Shown here in pieces: positions 560 through 21,861 of a stretch of DNA of 64,000 nt. Positions within the stretch are counted from its first letter, which is position 1. The number at the start of each line of letters is the position of its first letter. A program made the translations under genes and the position numbers. The DNA is taken from positions 1,972,106 through 2,036,105 of the forward strand of contig NW_002060950.1 in the NCBI RefSeq assembly GCF_000150275.1, written 5' to 3'. Under the pieces are notes generated by a model. The model did not search any database and was not told the origin of the DNA. It saw only the letters and a list, made by a program, of their open reading frames with translations. This stretch comes from Trichoplax adhaerens (Eukaryota > Animalia > Placozoa).

Positions 560-1671
560 TTATACCACTCGATCTGTAAATGGATTAGTGTTCAACTAAA
601 TTATAATCCTTATATCATAAAGTATAGGTATTCATATATAATATTCTACTTCAATATTCTTTACTTCCTGTGATATATACCAATCACGAAATTCCAAATT
701 TTAGAAAAATAAGGGCTTTATTGAATCTTATACAAAGATTAACTACACAGCTCTACTCTAGCCGAATACTACTTCTAAAGACTTCTACAACGAACTAACA
801 GAATAATCTAAAGTTGCATGCTTTTATACTTTTCGTAGCATTCGCAGCTACAATCCGCATGGCAACCTTTTACCTTATTTTACACATAGTTAAATTATTC
901 TTAGTAAGACTATTCTACTGCGGACCATCATTAATCCAATATAGATACGACTACAGTACTTACGTAGACATTATTCACACCAGCCAAAGTACAATGAATT
1001 AACCATATCCTAATATATGATTTACAGTTCTATTTTTACCTATAGCCATATTAGTAACTCAACAGCTTACTGTATATAGTCATCTGTACTCTAGCATAGC
1101 GTCTCTACCACTACAGTCTATAGTTACAGCTACCAAATATCTCTTAGGATAAATATCTACCGTACATTATACTACACATGGCTAACGGTCTACAATCACA
1201 ATACTAAGTTACATTACACTTCCCTTCTTTAGTTATGACAATTCCGACTAATTCAATGAATTTATCCTCGTTACGCTTTAATAAAAGTAAAAGCCTATTG
1301 TTTCTTTTCCTGTAGGAGGTTCCATATCGAAATAAATTACTCTTAATGTAATCCAGATGTCCGCGGTAGCGGTTGGTATCAAAGACAAGATTCTTCTACA
1401 GTAAAAAAGTTGCAAATTATATAATCTTCAAATCGTTAGTATTAGTAAATGGTAAATTAATTACTAACCTACAGCAATCGGTGAAAATTTATCTCCATTC
1501 CGCGTAAGATCTAATATGGTTATAAAATATTTTTTCGTGAAGACAGTCGAGATCTGTCAATATCGATGTTTTTCTCAATGCAGGCCATTGTTAAGGCATC
1601 TACAAGATGCATTATTAGATAAATCATTTTCACTTGTCCAATGCAAGAATTAAAACGCAAACCTTGATCAT
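560..1671 (-). pseudogene. Decayed paralogue of the cytokine-like gene (relic A)
   Basis: Minus-strand translation gives three collinear matches. Exon-2-like TSILTDLDCLHEKI...IRSYAEWR*IFTDCCR (~1466-1570) vs intact GSVLDVLDIVNGQL...GKYLAEYRNSF...VTCCQ. Exon-3-like, after the acceptor at 1396-1397: KNLVF...KRNNRLLLLLKRNEDKFIEL vs KNLLEF...QNNTKLLLKIQYLLDKTKIL. Exon-4-like NPFTDR/WY at 562-586. In-frame stops present. Confidence 0.55.
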
Positions 1672-1893
1672 TCAACCTAATCATACGGAGTAAATATTAT
1701 CAGACTGGTCTATCCTTACTACGACAATCTATTGATATTGTTAAAATTACGAGGATTACAGTGTTACAAATAAGATTAATCTGTATCGTGATAGCGAAAT
1801 AAAATAATGTCTACTTTTTATCAGATATTTATTCGTGTCTTTCGAAGAGATTCATTACTGTATAGCAAAGCACACAGAGTTTGCATCGCAGTT

Positions 1894-1943
1894 NNNNNNN
1901 NNNNNNNNNNNNNNNNNNNNNNNNNNNNNNNNNNNNNNNNNNN
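1894..1943. other. Assembly gap (run of N)
   Basis: 50 consecutive N bases. Confidence 0.99.
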
Positions 1944-2699
1944 CAATGATTAATTCTATATATATGGGTCTTATCAATTAATTTTTTTGACAATTGAATA
2001 CGGTACTAACGCAGTTACAATTGTAAACGTTCGATATCAACTAAGAGTTATATTATAGATTTCATAAAGAAAATAATATTCTAATAGGATAGTTTACTGA
2101 TCTTAATACCCAATTTGTTCGTAATAAATAAGTTATTAATATGGTTCTATACCGTGTGATAAAAATAAAAAGCGGTAATAAATTAAATATTTTAGGAAGA
2201 TCAAGTTGTTTCCCTTAATTCCCCGTAACACATTGATTGATATTGAATAAAAACTTACTGAGCAAGAATGATATATCAGAATTATTTGCCTTAAAATATT
2301 CACTTTAATTTCGTGTTGAAAATTTACGACGGTAGTCAAAATTATTTTTCAGTTTCATCCTGACGAAAAGCAGGCGAAAATAATACATTCTGAGCTATTT
2401 TGAATAACTATAAGTATAATAGCTTCATTTCATATCAATAGCGAAATGAATAGGTTACAGGTATTGACATTAGACGTGGTATCTTGGATTTTAATCTCGA
2501 CTTTATAATCTCAAATTGTATCCATATTCTTACTAATAATTGATATCCTTATTGACGCACAATCTAATTTGTGGTTAAATCAGTTTGTTCGCTATCTGGT
2601 TTAAGAGTAAGAATAAGGCTAACAAAGTCCTATTATAAGACAGTCTTTTACGTCTAATGTACGATCCCTTAACTTCTATTTTAATCAAGTAATAAACTA

Positions 2700-3565
2700 G
2701 TATCTGTTAAACCCTTCTAAAATTATTCAAGTGACAGTATATTTGTTTGAGATCAATTATTGATATGGACGTCTATCGAAGATAAGCTACCAATAAGGAG
2801 TATTTCAATTCTTAAATTGAATTCATGATTCTTTTATCCACTGAGCCTTCAATGCCATTGTGATAAATTCATTTTTATTCTATAGTATATGTAGCATATA
2901 TAGACTTACCATGCAGCGTTACTATTTATAAAATCGCCAATATATATAATAATGTACTGTATATTAAGAGTTACAAGATGCATTTCCATTTTTCAAGTAC
3001 TTTTTAAATAGAGTACAACAATCAGGCAGATAAACAGCGGTTCAAAGTTTTAATGTATAATAATGATGATGTTACGGTATATTATTCCAACTTGAATTCA
3101 AAATTGAATGCAAGTTTATGGAAAATGTTTTAAGTACCTAATCAATATTGCATGTTAGAAATTACCATCAATAGAATAGCTAAAGACTAGGAAAAGTAGT
3201 TACAACAACTCATAATTACGAATTATGTCGATATAATCAAAAAGAAAGACTTGCTCTATACTTGTCAGTTATTATATCAGTAATATTAAGTATTAAAAAT
3301 GCAGAACGAAGGTCTAACAGGAATTAGTCAATGTCGTAAGAAAGGAAAGTAGAGCTAAAGTTTACGCGAGTTATTATCGTTATCAGCTATAATAGGTACT
3401 AAGTAGTCAATATGAGGAGAAATTCTTTGCTTCAATTCGAAGCTGTATTAGAAGAGTTTGGAACAAGTAGAATGGCGTCTTTAGGGATCTATCACGTTGA
3501 ATGTTCTGCTTGATTTCGTTTTAAGGCTTAAAGCTATCTATAATTGCCTGGAATACAATGCTAAA
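2700..3565 (-). pseudogene. Decayed paralogue of the cytokine-like gene (relic B)
   Basis: Minus strand: IVFQAII...RDRSL...QLR...DYL...DNDN (~3370-3560) is collinear with intact IIWNAIL...KDGSV...QLR...KYL...DNDN. LLYSI*KVLEKWK (~2983-3021) matches LLLKIQYLLDKTK. Stops and frameshifts present. Confidence 0.5.
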
Positions 3566-5009
3566 GTATAATACATAATCCGTAAAACACTATAAGTATG
3601 GCGGCATTTTGTTATTGTAAGTTGCGTTGCCTTGCTTAATCAATAACCCAAACTACAGCATTAGGGTAATAGGAATGTTATGGAAACAATGTTTGATAAC
3701 ATTTCAATGATTTTAATATCATCTTTTATGCAACGAGGAACACAATTAACGTCATAAGTACAACAACAATCAGCTGCATATTTTATTTTTAACTAAATGA
3801 AAGCTGCGTGTAATTGCCAATATGGATTACAGGTATGCATATTCATCTGCAACCGATTTCATCATTAATTAATCACAGTTATTATGCAATAGCCGTTGCT
3901 ATTTTGATAATATCACCTATTTAAACAATTCTAAGAAATTGTGGTTAATACTAATTTATTGGTTAACAAGCAATTCTATACCGTAATGTAAGATAATAAT
4001 TGTAAAACCAGGAATCCTTACGCATCAGACAGTAATTAAAATATCCTTAAGCAATTAAATATTATATGCGATTAGAAACAACTCGATTTTCATAGGATAC
4101 CAATGCCTTTGTTAAACCGTTGCTGGCTTTGATATAATACCAAATTTTATGAAACAGCTCATAGTTTAATTTAAAGCTACTCATTGATGCTAAAGTTCGG
4201 AAAGTAGTTTGAGCGTGTTCACTGGCAATAGGAATTTTAGTAGTGCAGTTGGCCAGTAACTGAAATCGGAAATTATTTTAGTATAAGATCTATATCAAAT
4301 CTATACAGCATCAAATGGACGTTCTTTAAGTAACAAATAATATTTGCTAGACGGAAGTTTGATTATAAATTCTTCCGATCCGAATTTTTAACCTAATACT
4401 CCGACATACAATCGAATGATGTTTCCATCTTAAACTTATAAAAATAAAGTATTGTACTATTTTTATTTAGCTGAAGATTATTTAATTTTTAAATTCGTTC
4501 CTTTTCCTGACTATTTAGGCTAATCAAGTTGTCTACGATGGAATACTTAAGGTGTAAAATTCATTCAAAAGATTTGATGATGGTTGTTGGGCTTACTAAT
4601 AAGAATTATCGCCGATGACATTATACTTACGCTTAATCCGGTACCTTTTGAGAAAAGGTAAGAAGATTGGGGAACAAATTGATTTACTTCCAAATGATAC
4701 TATAAGACATTGGAAAAATAGATCGTTATTCAAAGTATTGCAGTATAAGGATGGTCGCTTTTCTGGTAATTATTCGATACAATTCTTGTCGGATCTTACG
4801 TAGTTTTAATAGTTAATCTATGATATGGTCATTTTTCCATTAAATATTACGCAAGTTACAATTAAGTAAAATATAAGGAAATTAAAGTGGCAAATTGACA
4901 ATAGCTCTGTCACGGAATCGTGATTAAATTATAATTTAAGTCAAATTTGAAATAAAACTCTGATTACAAGTTCGAGAGCAGACAAAAGTTGTTGATACAG
5001 AGAGAAACT

Positions 5010-6050
5010 GATCATAGTAACAATCTTGTTTTAGTCAATTTTGTAATAAAAATCATCCTTACATGCTCGACCAGGAAATTAATTAGTTGACCAGTATTTT
5101 CGATTACTTTTTGCAATTGACATACATTATTTTCGTATGAGTTAACCACGGATAAGACTGATCGTAACTTTCCAAGCTGTTCGAAAACGATTGTTAGCAA
5201 AGGATAGCCCTAGATTTTTTTACACGTTTTGCATAAAGGAAGCCTTTTTTAATTGAAGAAAGCTTTTATATAATAACTAACTGTATAAATTGTATTATTC
5301 TATTAAAAAAGCGAAAGCATCTGTGTAAATTGCAAATACCGATTAGATGAATGATAAGGGAAAAGAGAAGAATTATTAGGCAGATTTGATAAACGAGCAC
5401 TAATGGGATTTAAGTATTGTGAATTACATTCGTTGTTGCCTAACCTTTTCTAGCTTTTCAGGAATATTAAGAAGCAACGAATTACAACTGAAATCCATCA
5501 CGTTATTGACTTTGTAAATTCTTCGATGGCATTGAACGGCAAGTTCGATTTCTTTACCAAGCTCACTAGTCAATTTGGTAACATAAACGGCAAATGATGC
5601 CGATTCACGAGCTTGCGATCTCGATGTAATAGTAAATCCATGCGCAAGGCAACATAAAGTGCACAAGGTAAAAATTGCTTCTGTAACGAGAATAGAATTC
5701 ATGAATAAATAATATGAAAAGGTGTTGACTTGAGTTTTACGTACCTAAGCATAATATTATCAATGCTTAGACAAGATTGCGATTTTTATTCTAAATAATA
5801 CGTTTATACAATGTGCCCTATCAATTCCTATATTGATCTAATTTAGCAGCTCATAGAAATGGTTACTAGCTCTTAAAGATCATGAAAGATAGAATGCAAT
5901 ATGATATAAGGTGGCGTCCTAGCACAATGGCCCGACTTGTATATCCAGTACTTGTTATCAAATGATTACAAGCTACTGTAACTTCTTTTTCAATAAAATC
6001 AGTCTTTATTAGCTTCTGTACTATATTTACGAGTTCAAAAGCATATTGAG
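5010..6050 (+). pseudogene. Possible distant decayed paralogue of the cytokine-like gene (relic C)
   Basis: Hydrophobic NLVLVNFVIKIILTC, then DRNFPSCSKTIVS. After the acceptor at ~5461: QRITTEIHHVIDF...NGKFDFFTKLTSQ vs LRLKKLVKNLLEF..NGKFQQFIMQ. Helix-D-like LVYPVLVIK*LQATV at ~5935-5980. Weak, by-eye alignment. Confidence 0.3.
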
Positions 6051-7329
6051 AGAAAGGTAGAACAGTTACTCTATTCAAATATCTTAATTAAGCTTGTAGC
6101 TTTTACTAATGAAAGATGCGGTGTTATGCAAATGAACAAAACATCTTAAGATATGGTAGATAAATTGCTAAATTAGTTAGCTTAAGCTGTAGAAGGCCTC
6201 GATTAGACAAGATATCATAGAGGATAGTATATTGTCTGTTTTCAGAACGAATTACCTTTAAGTATTCAATACAACTTTACTTATCTATTGTAAGTAACAG
6301 TGTGATAGAGAATATCTTCAAGAATTACGTCTTAGCAAAATCTTGTTGAACGTATTATATATAAGCGTACTGTAAATCTTTCTACTGTTCTATATTACTT
6401 GCATCTGCCGTTCGATTATACTGTAACTATGGATAAATTATCAAATGCCTTATAGAACTAGCGTAAAGTTGTAATATTTAGGAGACTAGAATTTGTAGAC
6501 TATACCTAAGTTTTAAGAATATTATGCCAATAACTGATTCTATCTCGCGCAGGTACGCTAGGCAGAATCGCTGGATGAATTTTGCTATCAGTCTTATATC
6601 AACGTAAGAATTTTTCCTGTCATAATGTATCGCATTTGGAAAGCAATGTAAAAATAAGATAGAAATTGAATATACTAGCCAAAAGATAACCTACTTTTAA
6701 ATGTATCCTTCATATCGTTGAAGTAAGTGGAGAAGATTTAAATCAATTTGACGGAGCTTGAACAAATGTATTTTTGTAGAATGAAATTCTCGATCGGCTT
6801 TAACTTCAAAGCATAAAATGTACTTTATAGAATTGTAAAAAGTTTTTCCTAAAGATAGCTGATTGATCTAATATTCTATTTGATATAGAAAAGGAACTGA
6901 AATGATGAAATGCGGAACGCAATCATCCTTTTATGCGCTAGCGAAATGAGAAGATGTGCGTAGGATTGCATAAAGGAACCTGAAGAATTGCTACAGTATC
7001 GTACTCATCCGCATAGCAGTTGAGAGAAACAAAAAGAATATTCGATAAGTGTAAAGCAGCATTATTGTAACAACCAATAATAGAATAGATAATTAAATTA
7101 CTGTAGATAGGTTTTAGATCTGCATCAAGTAAAAAAGAAAAGGATATCATATTAAATCTTATAGAAAATAAGTTATCTTTCTATTCAAATAACAACTTAT
7201 AGGACTGCTTAAAACATGCTTTGTTATCGCAAAATAAACATAATCACTATGACACAGTGAGTATATTGATTTTCTTCAATAGCACTCTCATTTTTTCCAC
7301 TCTCTCTCTCTGTAAAACATTGTCATCGA

Positions 7330-8255
7330 TATAATAGATTAGTTATGTCCTCATTGGATAATATCTTACATTGATGATTATCTTTATTGAATCAGTCCAA
7401 TATTGCTTAATTAACTGGTTATCCAGACTAATCTGATCAAATAATAGGACTCCATCCAAATTATCAGGATCAACTTTCGTCTTAAAATTACGTATGTTAC
7501 GCCAGAATTATTTACAATTTGACTGTAATGGTGCAATATTTTTTCCTAGGTAATTGATTCAATAAATAAATGTCAAGGGAATTGTTCCATTCCGTATATA
7601 TCTATTGAATTATGCCATCTATGATCGTATCTTAAAATGAAAGCGGCTGTTTCTTTTTGTTTTGAGTCGCATTTACAAAATAGTTTAATTTAGTTATGAC
7701 GTCAAATTAAATCATATGCATTAGTTTCACAGTGCGCGGCTCATGAACTTTTCCTTGATTAGTTAATTTGATAACGCATTATCTGGATTTTACATTAACA
7801 ATGCTATTCAGTCCATATCAGCGATTGTTTAAATTACGGGAAGAATTAGATAGGGAAACAATTTAAATGTCAATACTACGTGAGAATTGTTCATAATAAT
7901 TAGCGGCTTGTAATATACCCAAGTATATTACATGCAGCCATAATATAATTCTATTAGAGCGGAAAGAAAACTCTTCTTATGGTATACATCTTACTCATTG
8001 AAGCTGATGATTCAGTTCTGCTAAGTAGATTCAAATCGTTGATTTTTTTCTAAATCATTTAATTTTTCTTTATCTATTTGATTACGACAGTAACTTCTCA
8101 GGTCAACATTGGTAAAAGCGCTTTTGCTATTAAAATCTTACTACTACCGATAAGTTAGCAATAAACTAATAGTAGCTGTTTCTACTGCTAATTTGGGAAC
8201 ATTCCAGCTGAAAAATTTTAAAGCGGTTAAAACGAATCAATGCTGTCCATAATAA
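7330..8255 (-). pseudogene. Decayed paralogue of the cytokine-like gene (relic D)
   Basis: Minus-strand DNA tacttagcagaactgaatcatcagcttc (8000-8027) vs intact tacttagctgaatatcgcaacagcttc, followed by a GTAAG donor (7990-7994). Signal-like LLWTALI vs IIWNAIL. Exon-3-like LTNQGKVHE...KLMHMI*FDVITKLNY (~7680-7767) vs IMQGKVQNNTKLLLKIQYLLDKTKILY. Confidence 0.55.
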
Positions 8256-8999
8256 TTTAAATGTTATGCTATTCTAAAGGTATAATAAGTTTTCTATTTA
8301 TGCAAACCAATTAACTTGTTTATGAATTTAGAATTACCCATCGGAAGTAATAAAGGAAAGTAGAATGTTATCTTTCAATTTTAAACAGTTTAGTATATGA
8401 ATTAGTAGCCATCGTCATCAGGAACTGAATTTATCCCACTTTATAACCGTAATTCGTGCAAGTTTAGTCCAGTTCTAGTGTACGCGTATGTTTCTCTAAT
8501 TAGATCTTATTATCATTGCTACATCGGTATTGATTATTAGTGAGGCATGCTAAATTGTCAATTATGACTATAGTGCTCCGTATCGGCTTTATTAATATAT
8601 TATTATTAAATGAAAATTGAAATTTGTTTACAAATGGTAAAAATAGTTGGTGAATAAGGTTTACTTGTAACAATCGTTTGAACTTTGATTTCTAATCTGT
8701 ACTCATGTTTTATTAACAAAATTCAAAATATTTATACATTACCTACCTAATGTTTTAGCGAATATAATCGAATTGATTTAAATTAAAAAGTTAGTCACTA
8801 TCAAAGCGTTAATTTTGCTCTTAAAATGTATTGCTAAATGCTAATGTAGCCGTTTTAGATAATGTAACTTTCTCGTGTAAGTCAATATTCAGATCTAAGG
8901 GGTATAGATACCTTTTAGCTAATAATATATCTTGCGTCAGCTTTAATTATCTGCCCACTAGCACTTAGGTAGTGCCTTACATACTACCTATCAATATGA

Positions 9000-11900
9000 A
9001 ACATTTTGTAACTACGAATAAGAATTTTTTTAAAGAAGCATTTAAAATAATCCAGTTTTCGTGCTATTTAGTAGGAAACAGAAAATTATAGAATTTCATC
9101 AAATATGTTCGGTTAATATCTTCAGCTACAAAGAAAATAGCCTATAATTCTATATGTAGCAGGCGAAGAAAACATTCAATCTGAATTCATTTTCATACTC
9201 ATTCAAACAATGATAAAATACGACACATCGTACTGCTTATTTCAATATGATCTTTCAGCTTTGGCAGCTCTATTTTAGAGAGATTCTCAGTTTCAGCCGC
9301 GGTTGAAACGGTTAAATCTCTCCTACTGATTTCGCTAAATAAAATAGTAATTATATAATTTCATTTATACTCGATCAAGAATTTTCGATTACGCAATAAC
9401 CGAAATAGTTTACTATAAGACAATCCCTCAGATATTTCCTACAAGCAGCACATAATATTCGACAACAATGCTTATCGCAAGTAAAGCGAATTGTTATGCC
9501 AGAAATGGTAGCAACGTCATTAAGTTCATTTATTTGCCTACAATAGCATTCTTTGAAACTGTTTTTTGTAAATTATCTATTTATTTGAGTCATATATGTT
9601 AAGAAGTAAATGAGCGAACGTTATTTTCACAGCCGTAAATTAATTATCATCCCATTACACAATTTGATCATATTACTAATATCAAAGATATATAAGTACG
9701 CAACGCTATTTTAAATCCAACATCAACAATTATTTAAAAAAATCTATCGCACTTAACTTTATACATTACATTAACTGGATTAGCATCACGCATTTTAGCA
9801 TTCGCCGATTGTAATTTAAATAAGTACTGTATATCTTCAGTAAATTTAATTTTCAATACTTAAATTATTTAAAGTGAAGTTTATTTTAGCTACACTAGAT
9901 AAACTGGTGGGCACGTGACTACTCGTATATATCTCTATTCTATACAAAGCTTCGAATACAATCCAGGGCGACAATATAAGTTTACTATAATGCATTGATT
10001 AGTAAAAAAATTTATTATCATCTTTATTCTCAACAGCAATAGTAACCGTAATGTTGGCGACACACCCCGTATTTAAAATTTTCACCCATTTATGCAAAAT
10101 ATCATTCTATCTATTCTGCTTTCATTCATTATTCAGCGATATTCTGTGCCATCCTCTTACCAGTGAAATTTATGCTGTGTATTAGACCGAAGTAATTTCC
10201 AACTTGTATTTCAGAAAAGGTAGATATTTCAAATATCTAAATATAAAGATATTTTAGGAAGACATGGCGTAAAATTTATTAATAACAGAATGTAAAAGGT
10301 ATGCAAAAGTATCAGATTACTGTTACATGTTACATTATTTTCAAGCAGGCTATAGGATAAATATGGTAATTTACGAGGCAGTCTGGCAATATATTTACAC
10401 TAAAGGTAATACTGATTAAAAGTGTGGATAGCATGATTTTATAAACTCTTTAGTTTAAAATACGATACTGGAATGATTCATCTGTTTAAATTTGGCAATT
10501 TGAAAGTTTTATTTTATGTACAGTTGCTAAGAAATTCAAGCTGGTTGGAAAGCTGTATAAAATCAGGAAACAAAGATCTAGTAATTTATTCTTGACTTAG
10601 TGCTAATGGCTCGTTGTACATCAGCATGTACATATAAACTTGCTATGTTCAGGATCGGTTCTGAATACTAAGTATACAATCTAACTGTTATTGAAACTTG
10701 TTACCTTAGAAATTGATTTTCTTCTGCACTAAAATATGATAATGGTTAAAATTGCTTTTTTGTTAAATATAACGTAAATTTTTCATTCAAATTAAATTTT
10801 CTTCTCTACTAAACAATGATGGTTGAAATCTGTCTTTTTATTTAATATTTCGTAAATTTTCATTATCATACGGTTTAATAGCATCATTAGTTCTGCAGTT
10901 CTTTTACTTAAGCTTAAATGCAGTTCCACTCAAGTAAATCGTTACAGGTAGTTAGGGCTAGGGTTAGGTAGTGGAATACTTGTAGGCTAATAAGTAACGA
11001 AATAAATCTACTTACCACCTGATAGCAATAATATTATGATTATGTCAGGGAAATAAAAATATCTATAGCTATATCCTCATCAATAATGTCATCAAATTAG
11101 TTCATTTGCATCATTTGAAATAAATGGACGGTTACCCGTTTTATTCTTTGTGCACTATCAATGATTTAAAAATGCAGAATCGGATAGACCACAATTTGAT
11201 ATTTATACACAAGCGTCTTTAATACTGTTATTATCTAAATATAAACAAGGAATTTTGGCCAAGCTGCAAGATTTTTTTAAGTTAGGTATTACAGTAAAGT
11301 ATATATATCATGAGTATATTAAAATAATGATGAAATTTACGTAGTTGTTATTGGCTATTCCATTCTACTTATATAACGTTCATGGAGAGAATTAGCCATG
11401 AATATTCTACAATTCTACCATTTGATGAGCGATTACGAAACATCATAATTACCTAACCATAAAAGCTCTCAGCCTAATTTTCTCATATTTTTTAATTAGT
11501 TGGTTGCAGGAGACGTCAATGCGTTGTTAAGACATTTCTAAGGGATAAATTATACAGTTTTGTGTTACTTTCAGTATTAAATATGACTACTAACTCAAAA
11601 TTCCAAGATACTGAATTCAATCACTATTTTACAACATTTAATCTCATATAATTATCAGTCAACTATAATTTTAGAATAGTTTACTGAAGCAAAAACCTTA
11701 CCATTATCTACGATTTACCAACATCTAAACTCCTGGTAATAGTAATTCGCATAAAAGCCAAAATTCACTACAGAATATCACTTTTAAGATTTAAGTGATT
11801 AGCAAATTTCTCTATAGCGGGTAACTAGTTTCAATTACTATTTTAGTAATTTTTATATATAACAAAATTTAGTGTAGAATTCACTTAGCAATCTAAATCC

Positions 11901-12960: not shown

Positions 12961-13769
12961 ATTGATTAGATATATATGTTATGTTATGTATATATATAGA
13001 TAAACATAATCATGTATTTCTGCACTTCTATAAGAGAGATATAATACAGTACCGGTACTATACCAAGAAGATGTTGATTTTTATTTGTCATGCTATAACA
13101 CGCTATTGGTGTGTTCGAAAGTAACATAAAAATGATTATATTAGTCTAAGCAATATCTGAAAGATAGAATTTGAACTTAATTTTATTTGCGATTGACCAT
13201 TATGCTTATTCAGTGAAAAATGAATTATCTCGTCTAAATAGCATAGCATACGACACGATAACTGGGATTGATGATAATTTTCTCATATTTTGCATGCAGT
13301 CAATTATACAGCTTATGAATGAAAAATATACCTGTAATTAACTAGAGTAACTAATTCATTCATAATACTATATATAGTATTTCATTTTGGTATTACACGT
13401 ATAGAAAAGAATATTTACTTCACAACGCAAATATCTCTAAAAAATTAACCAATTTTCAGAGTTCTAAGTAGCTGGTAAAATAAATGACTGGCAAGTATTT
13501 CTATTAATGCATCATATTTATCGTAATTTTTTATTTATTTTGCGACTGGTTTTCATTATATTCATACAGAACAATTGGCCAATCGGATAAATCTATTCTA
13601 TTATACGCAAGACGTAATACATATTAGTGAAATGTTTTCTTTAAGACTAAATTTATTTTTAATGGTGAAATAATGAACAAATACGAATTTTGCTTCAAAC
13701 TGAGTTAATATACGCGTATACATACTTATATTAGAAGTTCAGAGAGAAGAAATGACCTTATAAAGTTGG

Positions 13770-14460
13770 CGAATTAATATAATATTCTTTAATCAGTAGT
13801 TAGCCAATCTATCCTGCTATCATTGCACCTAATAGCTACTGCTGTCGCTTTGCTTGGTCATTAATCAGTAGATACCACCTAACTTCATCAGTAAAAGGAT
13901 TTATTTCTAACGATAGATATTTCTTTAGCTAGTTACGACTGATTATCTGTGGATTAATGGCAAAATTAGATATTATAGTCGGCAGAATTAATGTCTAACA
14001 CTTAATCTAAGCGGTAAAATTACACCCTTTATCAATGAATTCTATACTCTCATACCCATTTAAAGCATCAAAAGGTATCTTAGATTTGGCTACGATAGGG
14101 TTACACAACGTTATGTAATGTGTAGAGAGTGTCTCCAGGAAGTATCCTTCCTGTAGATATCAACGATTCCTTTCATGTGTATAAAAGAGAATATATGTTA
14201 GGAGAAACAATCAATTGGTTTAGCACAATTTTCTCTGAAGGGATCATAATATATTTAAAATTTCCGGCTTTAGTGTTTAAGTAAATACGGATGTGGCAAC
14301 TAGGTTCATTCTTAAAAGAAACCTTGCGGTTTTCTTCAATTTACATTGGCTTATGATAGTAGTTAATTCTTCAGTTATATGATTGCGAGGTATTTATTTT
14401 TGGTCTTTTGTCTCTACAAGTACGCTGAAGTAGATTAATGCAGGCTTATGATAGCAATTT
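13770..14460 (-). pseudogene. Decayed paralogue of the cytokine-like gene (relic G)
   Basis: After a minus-strand acceptor (tttgccattaatccacag): NPFTDEVRWYLLI...LLIKE (13872-13901 for the first motif) vs NFMDEWYYNL...LLLRE. The same NPFTD..WY motif occurs in relic A. A 47-codon open exon-like segment follows the acceptor near 14152. Confidence 0.45.
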
Positions 14461-14649
14461 ATGAGTAAAGAATATTTATTTGATTAATAAAACTAATATA
14501 ACCTCATCTTAATTTAAAATAAACTATCTATCTCCGAGGTATTATAAAAACAATTGGCTCAAGGAAAAAAAGTAAAGCATCAATTTAGAAGTGACCATCA
14601 AAAGCAGTTTAAACAAAATAATACCTTTGTATTATTAATGTATCACTAT

Positions 14650-15875
14650 TGCTGTTCGTTGAAATAACTTTTCAACTCTATGGATTCATTTTTCCACAAT
14701 TCCACTAATTTAGTTTTTTGATGAGGATAATCCACTACTATTAGTGTTAATAATTAATGTTGCTATGAATAGTATCTAATCTAAACATGATGAAATACCA
14801 AATGTTTAATGAATCCTAGAGATATGGTTAATTTTGGTTAAGAAGGTATATTCCTAGTTGGATCAGTGGTCAATCTTTTATTTAAAATTAAAAGGAACAA
14901 AAAGAAATTTTCTTTCAACTTTAAGCTGGCATCATCACCAGTGGTAATAGTGGTCTACTTGAAATTAACATAGTGACTTATATTCAACTCGACACGAATA
15001 CATGTAAAATATTAATCGATTTAAGTTATTACTTTAAACTAATCTATTAATTTTGCAAGCATTCAATATGATAAAAGCATACATTTGGGTCAGATTACTA
15101 CTTAGTGCGGCTTTATATTTCTAGTAGCTTCAGTTACCTTTAAATTTCTACATTTTAGTCCATGATATACGGCAATTGATATCGTATTTCTTTTTCGAAT
15201 GCTATACTTCGTACTATTGGAATAAAAATAACTATTTCCAGCCGCTAAATTCTGGTATATGATAGTTATAATTTTTATGAAGCAGAAATTATCAAGATGT
15301 TGTAATATTTCTAGCAATTTGAAATTCTCATCAATTCATATTAAATTAATTTTCCAGGTACACCTTTACCGAGAAGAATTAATTAATAGCCTTTATAATA
15401 ACGAAAACAATGATTATATCACTACTCGTAATGCTATAATTTGGAATTAGATTATATCTTTGATTCTTTGATAATTTCTTCCTTTTTCATTTAGTAATTA
15501 TATTAACAATTCTGTACGTACACAATGAATACTTTTGACGCAGCATTTTTTAACAACTTTTGGTACTAAGAGTGCATGAAACTAATTTATTCCTGAATAG
15601 CATCAAATATTTGTCAAGAGTTTGTTTTAAGCTAGGCGGAGCATCGATAGTAATAGGACAGCACTTGCGCAGTCAACTGAGCCTTATAGAGGTGAAAAAT
15701 ATTTATAGCAAAATTTCATGGATTACAATAATATTATCTGTTGGACCTTAATTATTAAATGAAATATAACACTGGTAATTATCTTTCATTGCTAACGATC
15801 ACTGTATTGTTAGCTATTCCTATCTAATTTCACAATTTTAAGCTGTTCAACTTTGCTTCAGGTTTTATTTCATAA
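14650..15875 (-). pseudogene. Decayed inverted paralogue of the cytokine-like gene, head-to-head with the intact copy (relic H)
   Basis: All four exons are traceable on the minus strand. Exon 1-like aaataaaacctgaagcaaagttg (~15850-15872). Exon 2: NIIVIHEILL*...KQTLDKYLMLFRNKL...KVVKKCC vs KTILIIWNAIL...QIIVGKYLAEYRNSF...EVTCC. Exon 3: IDENFKLLEILQHL vs VQNNTKLLLKIQYL. Exon 4 DNA tggtatttcatcatgtt...catagcaacatt vs tggtattataatctcgtc...gatagcaacttg. Confidence 0.65.
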
Positions 15876-16895
15876 TATCTCAAAATTAATAAAATAGATT
15901 GGGAAGTAGGTAATCACATGATAAATTCTAACTTAGCTTGATGATAGTATGGTTAATGAAAATCCTTGAAAAGAGGAAGTTCCTTACAACGAAGCATCAT
16001 TCAACGCTTGAATAAACTTCATGATTATTCCACCTGCATGCGGTATCAATTATGTATTAGATTGTCATTATTCCTAATTAATTTTGTCATTTTAATTTCT
16101 GAATATCTATTTTAAAGTTTTAATCCTTTTCCTGGCAACTGAAGTACTTAATAATTTTCTATTGCATCCTTATTATTATTTCTTTTCTATTATCAATCAA
16201 ATTGGTAGATAGCTACCAATTTTATTGAAAAGTGCGTGAGTGTATTATTACTTAAGTGATGATAGGCGTGGAGAATCTATCTGTAGTCAAAGTGACCATT
16301 CGCCTCTGGAATAAAGACTTAGAGTGAATCTTCCATGTGATTTGTGCAAACGTATCAAATTTATATTATAATGCTAATATTCTTAGTGTTATAGCAATCA
16401 TTTGCAACAGTATCATATTGCTGGTGAAAATTTTTTGATACATTTTTTAATGAGATTATATGAATACTTGAGTTAGGAAATAATTTTGAAATAGTTGATA
16501 GCTATTAACTCACATGTAAAACGCCAATTGATCTTAACTAAGATATAAATTTTAGAGAAAACTATTCTAAATTTAATTGAATTATTATTTGCAATGAATG
16601 AAAATTTAAACCATATCCTATAGTCCTTCCTTTACTGGAATAAATTACAATTTTAATTGCATATGCTTTATTATTTAAACTGAATAGATTAATTGGTACA
16701 CCATATGTTATTCGAATGCTACTACAAAAGCAAGTAAAGAATGCATAAAATATTTTCCGGTCAGTCGTTATGTCTGTAATTAAAGTTAATTGCATTTAGT
16801 ACTAATAATTTTATCCTAATGTTCTTTAAAAAATTCACTCCACACACAGACAATTAGCAAATCAAAATAAAAGTTCAAGGAGGGCAAAATATTTA

Positions 16896-16935
16896 CCAAT
16901 TAGCTAGATAATCGGCCAATAAATTTCTATATAAA
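16896..16935 (+). promoter_or_regulatory. Putative core promoter (CCAAT boxes + TATA box) of the cytokine-like gene
   Basis: CCAAT at 16896-16900 and 16916-16920; TATATAAA at 16928-16935, about 80 nt upstream of the ATG at 17014. The AT-rich background lowers specificity. Confidence 0.45.
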
Positions 16936-17013
16936 GGTTAACGAGGTGAGCTACCAAATCATTGTGACTTAGCCGTACTTTTGTTAACTTGAACTCAACA
17001 CTATTGGAATAAA

Positions 17014-18900
17014 ATGCCAGCCAAAGGTTTGTTTGTACTTTATCATTTGATACATTAACACGTCGTAAATTGTAAGTCGCCAAAGACCAGCTCAGCGTTA
17101 CTACTGCTTATTCGCCCTACGTTAAATTTCAAATTTCAGATCATGCTTAGTATTTTATTTTTCGATCTTAAGAGTTAGACATTTAATCATTGAATAGTCA
17201 AAAGCAGTTTTTGTTGAATATCTAATCTATAAAATAATCTCTTATAGCTAAAACTATCTTAATAATCTGGAATGCAATACTCGTTTGCTTTTGTTGGTAT
17301 TGCGGTGCTAAACCTGTTCAACCATCAACGAAAGATGGATCTGTCCTCGACGTCCTCGATATCGTCAATGGCCAACTACGTGACGTCCAAATTATTGTTG
17401 GCAAGTACTTAGCTGAATATCGCAACAGCTTCCCCAAAGACAACGATAACGAATTTGAGGTTACATGTTGCCAAAAAATTACAATCATATCGCATGATGC
17501 GCTGGTGAGTATCCTAAATCCAACTAAATATTCATTTTACTTTATTTTATCTTCGTTTTCATTTAAACAGCACTATCATGATCGGTTCTTCTGATAGATC
17601 ATGATTATTTAGTGGTAATCAATTAAATCTTATAAAATACTATCAATACATTCCAATGATACTTTTAATTGTGAATACACACTCTCTCTCTTACTAATTA
17701 TCATACTATACACGTGCAACCAATTTGTATTTTGGTACTGAATTTTACAATTACCAAATATTGCTCTTTAGTTTTGTCAGATATGATCCGTTAATTATGC
17801 CAAAAACGATGCTATAATCTCTGACAATATTGGCAATAAATTGTGCTGTACTATACATTATTATTTTTTCACCGTTGTTTCCTCTTTGTCTTAGTACAAC
17901 TACGTAAAATAACCACATAAAATACCATTATTATTTATTGTAAGAGTTTTCGCTAAGGCTATTTGACGACGCCTAATTCCAGAAATTATTGTAATAATTT
18001 TGTATCTTTGCTCTCTTTAATCTACAGTCTTCACCATGTCTACGATTGAAAAAGCTCGTCAAGAATTTATTAGAATTTTCACGCCCTAATGGAAAATTTC
18101 AGCAGTTTATTATGCAAGGCAAAGTGCAGAATAATACCAAATTATTGTTAAAAATTCAATATTTACTTGACAAGACGAAAATTCTATATGAGAATTTCCT
18201 CTACCTCGTAAGTCAGCTAAAATTTAAAAATAAACATTTATAACAGATTACTAGTGCATGATTGCAATACTACAGCTTACGAAGTTATACCGTAGATTTA
18301 AAAGTATAGTATCATATTAACTTGTAGGATTTGCTATTTCAAAATACTTAGCGTAACTTAACTAAAGACTAACTATTATAATAAAATTTTGCTTATACTT
18401 TACTTAGTTTAGCTTTGATCGGCGTTCAAATGTGAATAAAATATTTAGAAAGCTAGAAGTAAGTAAAACCGGTATCGTTCATTTTTGCTAATTAATCAAT
18501 GATTGTGTTAAGGAAAGAATTCATTGTCGTCTCTCAGTAAAAACCATAAATGTATTCATTTTAATTGAATCAATCAATATGGTTAAATATCAATGAAAAA
18601 ATGCCGCTATTTAAATACTAGCATTTATTAGTATGTCAAGAAAAAAATAAATCAATAACGTTATCGTTCTATATTTTTTCATCATAGACTACACAGCCAT
18701 CACTATCATCAAATAGTAATAATCAACCTAAAGACATAAATATAACGACAGCGCCTTCGATCGAAAATGATCAAAATTTTATGGATGAATGGTATTATAA
18801 TCTCGTCGATTATGATAGCAACTTGAACGCCATTTTTATAACATTGTTATTACTACGGGAAAGTGTCGTCACGGAAGGACGATTAGATTGTCGTCGATAG
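17014..18900 (+). CDS. Secreted 220-aa protein, predicted long-chain four-helix-bundle cytokine-like
   Basis: Exons 17014-17026, 17248-17504, 18028-18207 and 18688-18900 join in frame through GT-AG introns (phases 1,0,0). Protein: MPAKAKTILIIWNAILVCFCWYCGA|KPVQPSTKDGSVLDVLDIVNGQLRDVQIIVGKYLAEYRNSFPKDNDNEFEVTCCQKITIISHDALSSPCLRLKKLVKNLLEFSRPNGKFQQFIMQGKVQNNTKLLLKIQYLLDKTKILYENFLYLTTQPSLSSNSNNQPKDINITTAPSIENDQNFMDEWYYNLVDYDSNLNAIFITLLLLRESVVTEGRLDCRR. The gene model is well supported; the fold assignment is inference. Confidence 0.85.
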
Positions 18901-20399
18901 AAATTCATAAATAAATTCTTATTATTTATTTGCTATTTCTCTCTATCATTGTATAATAACCCATATTTCTAAAGATAATGTCAATACCGGCATATCCGTT
19001 TTATATCTAGATTACTATCTTTCAAACTATAAGCATGGATTACTTATGATAACGTATCGTCATTAAACTATGACTCTAAAAACTGTTAATAACAATATTC
19101 TTTGACAATAATGAATCGTTTATAACTTTTTGTAATATATAAAATAGATCTATATAGCTGGTATACACTCTTAGCAGTAATATTGTCAATAGTACCAGTT
19201 AACAACAAAAATAAGGAAATTTTGGTATATTATGATGTTGTCGTTCGAAGTTAACGTAAAATGATAGTAGATTGTGATGCAAGTAGAATTTGATACTAAT
19301 AATAGCTGTTTCCGTATGATCACTGTTTTACTTCAATTTATGGCTACGTTTAAAGTGTTAAATAACATCACATTATATTATCATTACATTGGAGTCTATC
19401 GTTGGCAGAAATTTTAGTAATGGCTTCCGACGATTTTATTACAGATTAGGATGATGTTTAGTCTTAGGAAAGTTGTTTCTTATCTTGATCATATAGCGAT
19501 ACACAAGAACAATTATCAATTAAGTAATTAATTTATTAATATTCTTGCGAAATAACGGTCATCAAAATACGATCCGTAGCCATACCTTTGTTTATGATGT
19601 AATTAATTATCTGTTAATTTTATAATAGAATTAATATAAAAATAGATAATTGCTCTTTACATCATACTGATATATTATGCTATCTTGGCAAGAATCTGAT
19701 GTTGAGCAATAATATGCCATTATATTGAAATCATACTACAGGTTGATCATTATTTTCTACTTAACAATTTCAACTTGTTAACTTGTTAAGGGAAATAATA
19801 CGGTCATAATCGGTATTGCTATACCTTATGACTAGCTCACAATTAAGATATGAAAGTTAACAGCTAAGCAATATCATTTAAATTTCTACATTCGTATTGA
19901 AGAAAAATAATCATAACTGGAATAAATATTCATATATGATGTCATTTTAAATCTTATTGTGAACAGACTATGAGTTATTATTATGCAGTAACATCGTTTG
20001 ACGAAGTGTGATCGTCTTGGTTTACTTTCTGGTTTGACGTAATATTTCTCTAGAAACGTAATAAATAAACGACATTTTCTTTATGTACAGGTAGAATCAC
20101 GTCAGAGCTTTTGAAGTAGTAGACAAATAGTTATAGAAACAAATAAAATGTCAACTAATGCGAAAAATTAAAATCTTATGCCATGAATAAGTTAATCTTA
20201 ATTTTTAGCAATAGCATCATCAATATCATTTCTGTAATGATTAATAAAAAGTATAAAAATACGATAGGAAACGATGTTCTATAAACGTAGCGAAAACTTT
20301 TAAAATCAGCAAAAGCTAGCAATGAAGTGATTTCCTTCCACAAAATATGTCAAATTGAATGTAAGGTATTGTATTCACATCGATATTAAGAGCATTAAC

Positions 20400-21170
20400 A
20401 AGAAGTTAGACGATATTTTAGGTCGATAAGTAAAGAGCTTATGGTAAAAATTAATATTTGTGCCACATCAGTAGTTGTTGATGAAGTAGTACTGACCAAA
20501 AGTACAACAACCAGTATTTATTATTGCTTATATAGCTTGATGAAATTACAGTTAATACAAGTCATCGTTTGTGTTTTTCACTACGGTATAATATACACAT
20601 CTACTTGTATATATGATATTGCTTCCTTTTTACGTAAATAAGGCACTAGTGCGATTAGTTAAACTTTGCTTAAAAGTAGAATTGTGATATTTTCATCGAT
20701 ACCAATATTTCAATCTTGTTATACGAGTACATACGGGCTAGTGCTTATTGAAGATGTTATTGATGCCCTGGATATTGTCAATATCGTTCAATTGTTATGC
20801 TGCAATTCGAAAAAAATTGTGTACGTTAACTTTAACATTGCACGTGCTCACTATATCTATGCAAATATGATAGTGACGGCCATATTTAGACCGCACCTAT
20901 TTATTTTGTTTTACAATCTTGGTAAATAGGGCTACAAATACGCTGGAATTTAGCTTAATTCAAATGATGATAAAGCATATGTAGATCCAAACACATTATT
21001 CTCCATACAAAATAAAGCATCTGGAGTGTTTAACATCAGCAATTAAGGCTTGTTATTGAGAGTTAATGTTTCACAGGCTCTTCCGTAAATATCCAAGTAT
21101 AACGTAGTTTATATTGAGCACCCAAAAGCATGTAAATATAAGATCGGATAGTGGCAATTGACTGCAATAG
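20400..21170 (-). pseudogene. Decayed paralogue of the cytokine-like gene (relic I), tail-to-tail with the intact copy
   Basis: Minus-strand cactatcatatttgcatagatata|gtgagc (~20846-20875) vs the intact exon-2 end tacaatcatatcgcatgatgcgctg|gtgagt. Exon-3-like GIDENITILLLSKV*L vs KVQNNTKLLLKIQYL. Exon-4-like FGQYYFINNY vs MDEWYYNLVDY. Confidence 0.5.
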
Positions 21171-21619
21171 TATCTATTTGTAGTTATAGATTGCAAGCAT
21201 ACGATAAGGGAAGATTTATTATAAGTTAATAAAGGACGAGAAATAAAGGTTCATTTTTATGTTTTTAATTGTCTTGATAAGTGAATATTCTTATATAATA
21301 TTTTAACTATTCATATTGCAACTTCATTCCATATTTCTTATTAGTTCATTTTTATTGGCAAGAATATGCATGTTATTTCAAAATTAGCGCTAAAATCAAT
21401 AATGCTCTACTGTACGAGGTATATTTGCAGTTGCGACCCTCCTATCATGTTTGACCATTTTTCTTACATAAAAAAATGCTGGCAATATTGCTGGCAGTTA
21501 CTTAGCATGTTTTCGTGAAGTTTATTCGCGCGTTTTACAGAATAGGTTATCAATGCGTTATTGATGTAGCGATAAATAACCCCTTGTAACCTTCTTTAAT
21601 TAATCAACAATTCTTAGCA

Positions 21620-21861
21620 TATCTTGACGTGGGATGAAACTTCTATTAGTACCGTATTGTGCATTATTATGCCAATAGCCATTGCAATACGCCCCCAGTC
21701 TACGATTTTTGCTGCAATACGTTGGCTATTGTTCAGCCAGGACTAAAATTTTATTATTGGGTCGGATGTTCGACTCAAGTCATATTGACCGATAAAACCT
21801 ACGGATACCATTTCCTACCTGGAATATAAAGAACCATATAGATTTGTAAATGAATTTAATG
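21620..21861 (+). pseudogene. Possible exon-2 relic of the cytokine-like family
   Basis: Signal-like ISTVLCIIMPIAIA-IRPQST (intact: CGA-KPVQPST), then frameshifted ISYLEYKEPY..VNEF ending at a GTGAGT donor (intact: GKYLAEYRNSF..DNEF). Confidence 0.3.

What the first reader, a model, noticed from the sequence alone, without database searches (positions are those of the whole stretch)
560..21861. The 22-kb 'gene desert' looks like a graveyard of about ten or more decayed paralogues of the cytokine-like gene
Seen: motifs of the intact gene recur in the right order, often next to remnant splice sites, every 1-2.5 kb on both strands. They include the signal segment, the helix-A end KYL..[YFW]R, the loop Cys (CC or PSC), exon-3 NLLEF/NGKF/QGKV/KLL..I.Y and exon-4 F.DE..WY. 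The strongest relics are at 0.56-1.67, 2.7-3.57, 7.3-8.26, 13.8-14.5, 14.65-15.9 and 20.4-21.2 kb (all minus); weaker ones are at 5.0-6.0, 9.0-9.3, 10.1, 11.1, 12.8 and 21.6 kb. Relics share motifs with each other that the intact gene lacks (NPFTD..WY at 562-586 and 13872-13901; KVVK.C at ~15540 and ~12811; PSC at 5172, 11260 and ~14300), which argues against chance. Inference: an old tandem birth-and-death cluster of secreted ligands, like vertebrate cytokine clusters, reduced here to one survivor. Related lineages may keep several functional members.
Basis: partly seen in the sequence, partly recalled or inferred. Interest (0 to 1): 0.88.

Follow-up and report, generated by a model that had tools for sequence, protein, structure and literature searches.

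The report
No gene graveyard; one overlooked live gene
The supposed graveyard of about ten dead copies of a cytokine-like Trichoplax gene is chance motif matching in AT-rich spacer DNA, but the stretch does hold one overlooked, intact and expressed gene for a small secreted protein, which has a real sister gene just outside the window.

Summary
The window is Trichoplax adhaerens DNA.

Many of the listed motif strings are present, but no test puts them above chance:
- Translated searches with gene A score no better than shuffled queries.
- A mild excess of weak hits is matched exactly by the reversed protein (296 vs 297), so it reflects composition.
- Control DNA gives an equally good nine-step collinear chain.
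- Two places share a 5-residue word about 400 times by chance.
- Long-ORF counts, self-comparison and exon profiles find nothing further.

The region is not a desert. A spliced RNA contig defines gene B (6819-3110, minus; five exons; 222 aa; signal peptide). Gene B is a demonstrable paralogue (z 5.2) of TrispH2_011534 (gene Z), which lies 8-11.5 kb left of the window. B has the same exon phases (1,0,0,0) as A and similar exon sizes, but A shows no significant sequence link to B or Z.

So a small cluster of live, fast-evolving genes exists, separated by ordinary spacers of about 10 kb. The graveyard itself is unsupported. The scan noted a similar cytokine-like array on another piece of this genome (s1-733977).

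The parts
6695..6819 (-). Gene B exon 1. The RNA contig starts at 6819. The ATG is at 6713-6711, followed by 19 coding bases (MKDTFK + 1 base) and a GT donor: a phase-1 intron.
   Evidence: Spliced contig of run X6, record 17; junction sequence and translation.
5445..5680 (-). Gene B exon 2 (236 nt). It holds the signal-peptide core AIFTLCTLCCLAHG, then a helical segment with two Cys. It has the strongest GC peak in the region outside gene A's exon 2.
5063..5209 (-). Gene B exon 3 (147 nt, 49 aa, phase 0 at both ends).
4631..4699 (-). Gene B exon 4 (69 nt, 23 aa, phase 0). The RNA strain has a one-base difference at 4632.
   Evidence: tables 5 and 5c.
3110..4259 (-). Gene B exon 5. It has 65 codons, a stop at 4064-4062, then about 950 nt of 3' UTR.
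17014..18900 (+). Gene A = TRIADDRAFT_58653 / TrispH2_011536, 237 aa. Exons: 17014-17026, 17248-17504, 18028-18207, 18408-18458, 18688-18900.
   Evidence: Exons 1 to 4 are conserved in another placozoan (L004); L004 ends before exon 5.
16850..17013 (+). Conserved upstream block of gene A, up to 90% identical to the other placozoan, with CCAAT and TATAAA-like motifs. Probably the promoter.
15633..16700 (.). Three conserved non-coding blocks (15633-15699, 15965-16091, 16624-16700). The first coincides with the 'KYL' relic. It carries 1-nt indels and stops in both species, so it is not a conserved reading frame.
1894..1943 (.). Assembly gap. It is bridged by a DNA contig of run X1, and real letters are missing.
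   Evidence: tables 5, 7, 8.
7200..16849 (.). Intergenic spacer between B and A. It holds the claimed relics at 7.3-8.26, 9.0-9.3, 10.1, 11.1, 12.8, 13.8-14.5 and 14.65-15.9 kb, with no support for any gene or pseudogene.
   Evidence: The Trichoplax sp. H2 annotation calls no gene in the matching 7.3-17 kb.

Best explanation
There is no detectable graveyard. The first 22 kb of the window hold two live genes of Trichoplax adhaerens, separated and flanked by ordinary AT-rich intergenic DNA (about 29% G+C).

Any six-frame translation of such DNA produces them in abundance, and with 44,000 codon positions they can always be strung into 'collinear' chains.

One of the claimed relics is really gene B (6819-3110, minus strand). 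It is a five-exon, spliced, expressed gene for a 222-aa protein with an N-terminal signal peptide and a predicted helical body.

Gene B arose by tandem duplication with gene Z (TrispH2_011534 orthologue, same strand, 8-11.5 kb left of the window). They share exon sizes, intron phases and significant sequence similarity.

Gene A (TRIADDRAFT_58653, plus strand) has the same architecture: a few codons in exon 1, a phase-1 intron, then phase-0 introns. Exon sizes are 85-90, 49-60, 17-23 and 65-70 aa. A may be a third, far more diverged member, but that is inferred and not shown.

What is shown: the statistics against relics, the structure and expression of B, and B-Z homology. What is inferred: secretion of B, a common origin of A with B/Z, and any signalling (ligand) function.
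For: Against relics:
- tblastn of A against the masked window: the best hit (24 bits, E 0.18) lies in the control part at 53.5 kb.
- There is no DNA or translated self-similarity within 1-22 kb.
- Searching the window's own genome with A's exons finds only A itself; B's exons find B itself plus one weak outside hit, examined under Tried and rejected.
- Best HSP and best chain equal shuffled queries for both A and B.
- The excess of weak HSPs (296 vs 241 +/- 17) is spread evenly over both strands and all positions. It comes from low-complexity query segments, and the reversed query reproduces it (297).
- A control region gives a chain of 130 bits, and its reversed query gives 124.
- ORFs of 70 or more codons: 7 observed, 7.3 expected.
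- An exon-2 template scan finds A, B and only one unconvincing extra candidate, at 15138-15310 (-), with a poor donor.
- B/Z exon profiles hit only B and Z in 104 kb; everything else scores like the reversed database.
- Shared 5-mers are at the random level.
- There are no tandem repeats and no Rfam families.

Gene B:
- One 1728-nt contig has four GT-AG joints on the minus strand.
- The frame is open across all joints and there is a signal-like N-terminus.

B-Z homology:
- Exon-anchored alignment gives z 5.2 with 0 of 1000 shuffles reaching it; the last exon alone gives z 5.6.

Annotation:
- The H2 locus tags 011534 (Z) and 011536 (A) leave one tag between them.
- H2 has no gene call in the stretches matching window -7.9 to +1.2 kb and 7.3-17 kb.
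Against: Very old pseudogenes decay beyond detection, and this family evolves so fast that even intact A and B share no significant similarity (z 1.8). A negative alignment test therefore has limited power.

RNA was laid only on 1200-7199, so expression elsewhere in the 22 kb was not examined directly.

Some claimed relic places coincide with mild G+C peaks (1.04-1.23, 13.8-14.17, 15.53-15.69 and 21.4-21.85 kb). One coincides with a block conserved in another placozoan (15633-15699). I explain that block as regulatory DNA, but I have not shown this.
Confidence: 0.8

Rival explanations
1. A real but very old birth-and-death cluster. Some of the listed places (most plausibly 13.8-14.2 kb and 15.5-15.7 kb, minus strand) are true remains of paralogues of A, B or Z, now decayed below what sequence statistics can detect.
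For: Tandem duplication did happen at this locus (B-Z). Family members diverge very fast (A-B z 1.8, A-Z not significant). There are mild G+C peaks at several relic places. The 13872-13901(-) stretch reads '...NPFTDEVRWY...' against A's 'NFMDEWYY' and B's 'FHKIWYY' in their last exons.
Against: No statistic separates these places from control or reversed-query noise. The frames are broken by stops every 20-30 codons. In the other placozoan, the 15.6-kb block has 1-nt indels and stops too.
Confidence: 0.12
2. The spacers hold further live genes with small exons (peptide genes or non-coding RNAs) that neither the ORF statistics nor the H2 annotation reveal. The reader's motifs partly reflect their exons.
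For: Gene B was not found by my exon-wise database searches, whose length filter would have hidden a full-length record; it was found only through RNA. Conserved blocks exist at 15633-16700.
Against: The H2 annotation has no gene call in the stretch matching 7.3-17 kb. ORF counts are at the random level. The template scan gives only one unconvincing extra exon-2 candidate, at 15138-15310 (-). The conserved blocks lack a shared frame. There are no Rfam families.
Confidence: 0.08

Closest known systems
Vertebrate cytokine and chemokine gene clusters shaped by birth-and-death evolution, with pseudogenes among live copies
   Same: Neighbouring genes for small signal-peptide-bearing, helix-rich proteins that diverge very fast. 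At least one tandem duplication is shown (B-Z).
   Different: No pseudogene is detectable here. Three live genes sit about 10 kb apart, which is close to the genome's average gene spacing (my rough estimate from general knowledge of genome size and gene number). Membership in a cytokine family is not shown.
TRIADDRAFT_58653 (XP_002114623.1, UniProt B3S3A8; UniRef100 cluster name 'Interleukin-6') = TrispH2_011536
   Same: This is gene A itself, identical over 237 aa. The protein-language-model neighbours are LIF, CNTF/cardiotrophin, GH/PRL, IL-6, G-CSF and IL-11 clusters at scores of 0.91-0.94.
   Different: There is no Pfam match and no sequence match in the PDB. The AlphaFold model is unusable at pLDDT 35. 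No paper in the searched library mentions it.
TrispH2_011534 (RDD36743.1), a hypothetical protein of Trichoplax sp. H2
   Same: Paralogue of gene B. Exon sizes are 54/22/64 aa against 49/23/65 aa, all introns are phase 0, and similarity is significant.
   Different: It lies outside the window. As annotated it starts at an internal Met without a signal peptide. An in-frame, conserved stretch upstream, behind a conserved acceptor site, suggests a missing first exon. It has no language-model neighbours.
Earlier scan finding s1-733977: a Trichoplax-only array of three intact and two decayed IL-6/IL-11-like secreted-protein genes on another contig
   Same: The same kind of object in the same genome: orphan, fast-evolving, clustered, cytokine-fold-like secreted proteins.
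   Different: Searching the window's own genome with A's exons found only A itself; B's exons found B itself plus one weak hit on another contig that does not look like a gene. So no sequence link to that array is shown, and I did not examine it.

Membership tests
Array of decayed paralogues (pseudogenes) of gene A | Translated similarity to the parent gene above composition-matched controls | tested here: not met
   The reversed query gives 297 weak hits against 296 for the real one.
Array of decayed paralogues (pseudogenes) of gene A | Collinear exon order within 1-2.5 kb, better than chance | tested here: not met
   The best chain is 112 bits against 106 +/- 10 for shuffles. Control DNA gives 130 bits.
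Array of decayed paralogues (pseudogenes) of gene A | Relics resemble each other | tested here: not met
   tblastx self-comparison gives a best score of 29.5 bits, E 0.3. Shared 5-mer pairs: 401 against 383 +/- 28.
Array of decayed paralogues (pseudogenes) of gene A | Intact counterparts at syntenic places in related species | tested here: inconclusive
   Only 14795-18462 could be compared (L004). There is no open frame at the 14.65-15.9 kb relic.
B/Z family (TrispH2_011534-like placozoan proteins) | Significant sequence similarity between members | tested here: met
   B-Z exon-anchored alignment gives z 5.2, with 0 of 1000 shuffles reaching it. For A, this is not met: A-B z 1.8, A-Z z -0.35, and the B/Z profiles do not hit A.
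B/Z family (TrispH2_011534-like placozoan proteins) | Shared exon-intron layout: short exon 1 with a phase-1 intron, then three phase-0 introns and matching exon sizes | tested here: met
   Shown for B. Shown for Z exons 2-5, with a conserved phase-1-compatible acceptor. A has the same layout.
B/Z family (TrispH2_011534-like placozoan proteins) | Expression as spliced mRNA | tested here: met
Long-chain four-helix (class I, IL-6/LIF/GH-type) cytokines | Match to a family profile (Pfam IL6, LIF_OSM, CNTF, Hormone_1, GCSF, IL11) | tested here: not met
   No Pfam family for A, the exons of B, or the first coding exon of Z at E up to 1, apart from two chance-level hits. No PDB sequence match for A or Z.
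Long-chain four-helix (class I, IL-6/LIF/GH-type) cytokines | Up-up-down-down four-helix bundle fold | tested here: inconclusive
   The models of A (pLDDT 35) and Z (pLDDT 42) are all-helical but unusable. For A, language-model features point to this clan at 0.94 with 216 of 256 features shared. Z gets none. B could not be submitted because a joined sequence has no reference.
Long-chain four-helix (class I, IL-6/LIF/GH-type) cytokines | Five exons with intron phases 1,0,0,0, as I recall for GH, EPO, IL-6 and G-CSF genes (from memory; not confirmed in the papers searched) | tested here: met
   A: coding exon lengths 13/257/180/51/213 nt. B: 19/236/147/69/198 nt. This is a lead, not proof: phase 1 next to signal peptides and phase 0 elsewhere are both common.
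Long-chain four-helix (class I, IL-6/LIF/GH-type) cytokines | A cognate class I cytokine receptor in the same genome | not tested
   Not searched here. One paper reports the class I receptor CRLF3 absent from Placozoa (PMC6797617). An earlier scan note (s1-741771) reports a class-II-like receptor gene.

The most novel reading that the evidence does not exclude
Genes Z, B and A are one fast-evolving, placozoan-specific family of secreted long-chain four-helix cytokine-like ligands, arranged as a tandem cluster. This would place the IL-6/LIF/GH-type fold and its 1-0-0-0 gene structure before the split of placozoans from cnidarians and bilaterians.
Probability: 0.12. Interest if true: 0.8.

Novelty: new member of a known kind. 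Interest (0 to 1): 0.3.

Why it matters
As stated, the finding would have been the first pseudogene-rich cytokine-type cluster in a non-bilaterian animal. It is not one, and it shows how readily collinear motif chains arise in AT-rich DNA.

Three modest but useful points remain:
- The apparent gene desert contains a live, expressed gene for a protein with a signal peptide. My database searches did not find it, and it probably corresponds to TrispH2_011535.
- That gene and TrispH2_011534 form a true tandem pair. They share their exon layout with TRIADDRAFT_58653, the one Trichoplax protein that both an automatic database name and a protein language model liken to IL-6-type cytokines.
- This gives three candidate proteins and clear comparisons to test whether helical cytokine-like ligands exist in placozoans.

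Tried and rejected
**Tests that found nothing**
- tblastn, tblastx and blastn of gene A and of the region against itself: nothing above noise.
- Chain statistics with fully shuffled, exon-wise shuffled and window-shuffled queries. They showed a region-specific excess of weak hits that looked like support, until the reversed query gave the same count.
- ORF-length statistics, a fine G+C profile and an exon-2 template scan. The scan recovers only A, B and one unconvincing ORF at 15138-15310.
- Searches of the window's own genome with the exons of A and B. These gave only self hits plus one 21.8-bit match on contig C1327 that does not look like a gene.
- Pfam, PDB sequences, Rfam and tandem repeats: nothing.
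- Literature: no paper on a placozoan helical cytokine or on these locus tags.

**Searches limited by the tools**
- The search for homologous proteins with B's exon-2 and exon-5 frames gave nothing. The length filter would hide a full-length 222-aa record, so this does not show that B is unannotated.
- AlphaFold on A alone gave pLDDT 35, and on Z with a shallow alignment pLDDT 42. Both are too poor for a fold search, so none was run.
- MAFFT misplaced B's exon fragments against Z, so only exon 5 was kept.
- The two H2 stretches fetched (L013, L017) stop at window positions 1171 and 7260. So they show neither the gap nor gene B.

**Joined sequences**
- The spliced proteins of A and B were used only inside local scripts, built from the session's files.
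- In the database tools, A and B were searched exon by exon by reference, and A also through its own database record P0001.
- The joined gene B protein was not sent to any search or fold tool.
Full report
**What the window is.** The window is AT-rich animal DNA. G+C is 28-32% across 1-22 kb, with one 50-N gap at 1894-1943. Earlier notes of this scan name the genome as Trichoplax. That is the length of the window's own contig.

**The intact gene (gene A).** The exons are 17014-17026, 17248-17504, 18028-18207 and 18688-18900, all with AG/GT borders. The database protein (237 aa) has one more exon of 51 nt, at 18408-18458.
- A 3.7-kb contig from another placozoan (L004, from a marine metagenome) is colinear with window 14795-18462.
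- It conserves exons 1 to 4 and the promoter.
- Gene A is therefore real and under constraint.

**Testing the graveyard by alignment.**
- tblastn of gene A against the window with the gene masked gives nothing. The best hit (24 bits, E 0.18) is at 53.5 kb, outside the region.
- blastn and tblastx of the region against itself find no related pair of places.
- The window's own genome, searched exon by exon, returns only gene A itself.
- Weak hits chained in query order on one strand give a best chain equal to that of shuffled queries. This holds for A and for gene B, described below.

**An apparent excess that turned out to be composition.** One statistic did look positive. The 16.2 kb of background gave 296 weak hits to A, against 241 +/- 17 for shuffled queries. 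Three size- and composition-matched control regions showed no such excess. I followed this up.
- The excess is the same on both strands and in every kilobase.
- It comes from three K/L/I/N/Y-rich stretches of the query.
- The reversed protein, which cannot be homologous, gives 297 hits.
- So the excess reflects the local make-up of this DNA, not descent.

**How easily such chains arise.** A control region 13-15 kb left of the window gives a nine-step collinear chain with 'TIIIIL', 'PKYL*FYINS', 'TMCILKIQFI' and 'YYNIYD'. It scores 130 bits, better than anything in the region, and its reversed query scores 124.

**The individual motifs.** Many of the strings are present, but the argument that shared motifs rule out chance does not hold.
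- The background contains 401 pairs of places that share an exact stop-free 5-residue word. Random sequence of the same make-up gives 383 +/- 28. A shared NPFTD is one of about 400 expected coincidences.
- KVVK.C occurs on opposite strands.
- PSC is as common in the control 42 kb as in the 22 kb.
- F.DE..WY is not the intact gene's own motif.
- Frames around the best places are cut by stops every 20-30 codons.

**What is really there: gene B.** I laid four runs on 1200-7199. One run (X6) holds a 1728-nt contig that lies on the minus strand in five pieces with four GT-AG introns. After adjusting two joints by one and two bases to the splice consensus, the exons are 6819-6695, 5680-5445, 5209-5063, 4699-4631 and 4259-3110.
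- The frame is open from the ATG at 6713 to a stop at 4064-4062. That gives 222 aa.
- The protein starts MKDTFKKAIFTLCTLCCLAHG|FTITS, a typical signal peptide, and continues with helix-like sequence.
Its 3' UTR covers part of the 'strong relic' at 2.7-3.57 kb.
- The run is labelled only as 'RNA?', but four canonical splice joints show that the contig comes from spliced RNA.
- My database searches with two of its exons found nothing. Those searches cannot see a 222-aa record from a 71- or 106-aa query.

**A sister gene just outside the window (gene Z).** In the 40 kb left of the window, a 126-codon frame turned out to be the first coding exon of TrispH2_011534, a 207-aa hypothetical protein of Trichoplax sp. 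H2. It lies on the minus strand, 7.9-11.5 kb before the window's first base.
- Its exons are 67+, 54, 22 and 64 aa, with all introns in phase 0. Gene B's are 85, 49, 23 and 65 aa.
- They are true paralogues from a tandem duplication on the same strand.
- Upstream of its annotated ATG there is a conserved acceptor site, followed by an in-frame stretch that changes mostly synonymously or conservatively. This suggests a missed first exon with a phase-1 intron, as in B and A. That point is inference.

**Is gene A part of the same family?** A shares the layout: a few codons in exon 1, a phase-1 intron, then three phase-0 introns, with exons of 90, 60, 17 and 70 aa. Sequence does not tie it in.
- A-B gives z 1.8 (p 0.05), carried by the last exon (FMDEWYY against FHKIWYY).
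- I put a common origin at about even odds.

**No further members or relics.**
- Profiles of each B/Z exon, searched against all six-frame fragments of 104 kb (left flank plus window), hit only B and Z. Everything else scores like the reversed database.
- Frames of 70 or more codons outside A and B number 7, against 7.3 expected.
- A scan for exon-2-like frames (AG, phase 1, signal core, GT) recovers A, B and one unconvincing frame.
- In the H2 annotation the locus tags of Z (011534) and A (011536) leave exactly one tag between them.
- The fetched H2 stretches show no gene call in what matches window -7.9 to +1.2 kb and 7.3-17 kb.
- The missing tag therefore most likely is gene B. This is inference.
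- The 'desert' is thus two spacers of about 10-11 kb. That is near the genome's mean gene spacing, by my rough estimate from about 100 Mb and about 11,500 genes (general knowledge).

**The one relic that could be checked by synteny.** L004 aligns with 14795-17000 at about 54-62% identity, depending on the aligner. Four blocks stand out: 15633-15699, 15965-16091, 16624-16700 and the promoter at 16850-17013. Within it the two species differ by single-base indels, and both have stops in every frame. I read these blocks as regulatory DNA of gene A, not as exons or relics. That reading is inferred.

**The assembly gap.** A DNA contig of run X1 lies on both sides of 1894-1943. By its coordinates, about 113 of its letters fall between the flanks. 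A contig of run X5 runs 38 letters into the gap, and those letters match nothing after it. The two sides are therefore joined, with probably somewhat more than 50 letters missing. No claimed feature crosses the gap. The H2 stretches I could fetch stop short of it.

**What the genes might be.**
- Gene A has no Pfam family and no PDB sequence match.
- It carries the automatic UniRef name 'Interleukin-6'.
- In the ESM Atlas its nearest clusters by language-model features are LIF, cardiotrophin/CNTF, GH/PRL, IL-6, G-CSF and IL-11, at 0.91-0.94 with 200-216 of 256 features shared. The tool's own notes say shuffled proteins reach 0.9 in 4-10% of cases, so this is a lead only.
- Z gets no such neighbours.
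- AlphaFold models of A and Z are all-helical but far too uncertain to compare.
- The 1-0-0-0 phase pattern with a tiny first coding exon is what I recall for GH, EPO, IL-6 and G-CSF genes. That is from memory, and the papers I searched did not let me confirm it.
- No paper in the library mentions a placozoan helical cytokine or these genes.
- One paper reports the class I receptor CRLF3 absent from Placozoa (PMC6797617).

**Limits.**
- RNA was laid on 6 kb only.
- Spliced proteins were searched exon by exon by reference in the database tools. The joined proteins of A and B were used only inside local scripts, built from the session's files.
- The joined gene B protein was not sent to any search or fold tool. 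Its fold, its language-model neighbours and its identity with TrispH2_011535 are therefore untested.
- Very old pseudogenes can decay beyond any test. I leave about a one-in-eight chance that a few of the places are real remains.

**Verdict.** The graveyard is not supported. The region holds ordinary spacers and one overlooked live gene. This gene belongs to a small tandem family (B and Z), next to the cytokine-like gene A, which has the same architecture.

Noticed in passing
window 16850-17013: The stretch just upstream of gene A is up to 90% identical to another placozoan's and contains CCAAT and TATATAAAGG-like motifs about 60-110 bases before the ATG. It is a likely core promoter.
   Followed up: partly
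window 15633-15699, 15965-16091, 16624-16700: Three conserved non-coding blocks (78-85% identical over 60-base windows, against a background of about 54%) lie 0.3-1.4 kb upstream of gene A. They have no shared frame and no Rfam family. They are candidate enhancers.
   Followed up: partly
G000:C1407, 7.9-11.5 kb left of the window start (L011:1736-2113 and L009): The gene for TrispH2_011534 (gene Z) is probably mis-started in the H2 annotation. A conserved acceptor (ttatttcag) and a conserved in-frame stretch upstream of the annotated Met suggest a missing first exon and perhaps a signal peptide.
   Followed up: partly
left flank, window coordinates -12466..-11834 and -2121..-1493; also in L013 and L017: A dispersed repeat of about 550-630 bp has copies 92-97% alike on this contig and in the H2 contig. 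It was not identified.
   Followed up: no
window 8662/8665 and 11694/11695; left flank -7102/-7101 and -6261/-6011: Trichoplax sp. H2 is about 99.3% identical here but carries extra DNA at these points: about 150, 110, 950 and 170 (net -80) bases. In total it has about 1.18 kb more between the start codons of Z and A.
   Followed up: partly
window 1039-1229, 6857-7086, 13803-14175, 15532-15693, 16198-16358, 21382-21848: Mild G+C peaks (0.37-0.43 in 150-base windows, against a mean of 0.30) lie outside known exons. They are unexplained, apart from the likely promoter of B.
   Followed up: partly
window 17014-18900: UniRef100 names the product of gene A 'Interleukin-6' (B3S3A8_TRIAD), although Pfam finds no IL-6 domain. 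The basis of that automatic name is unknown to me.
   Followed up: partly
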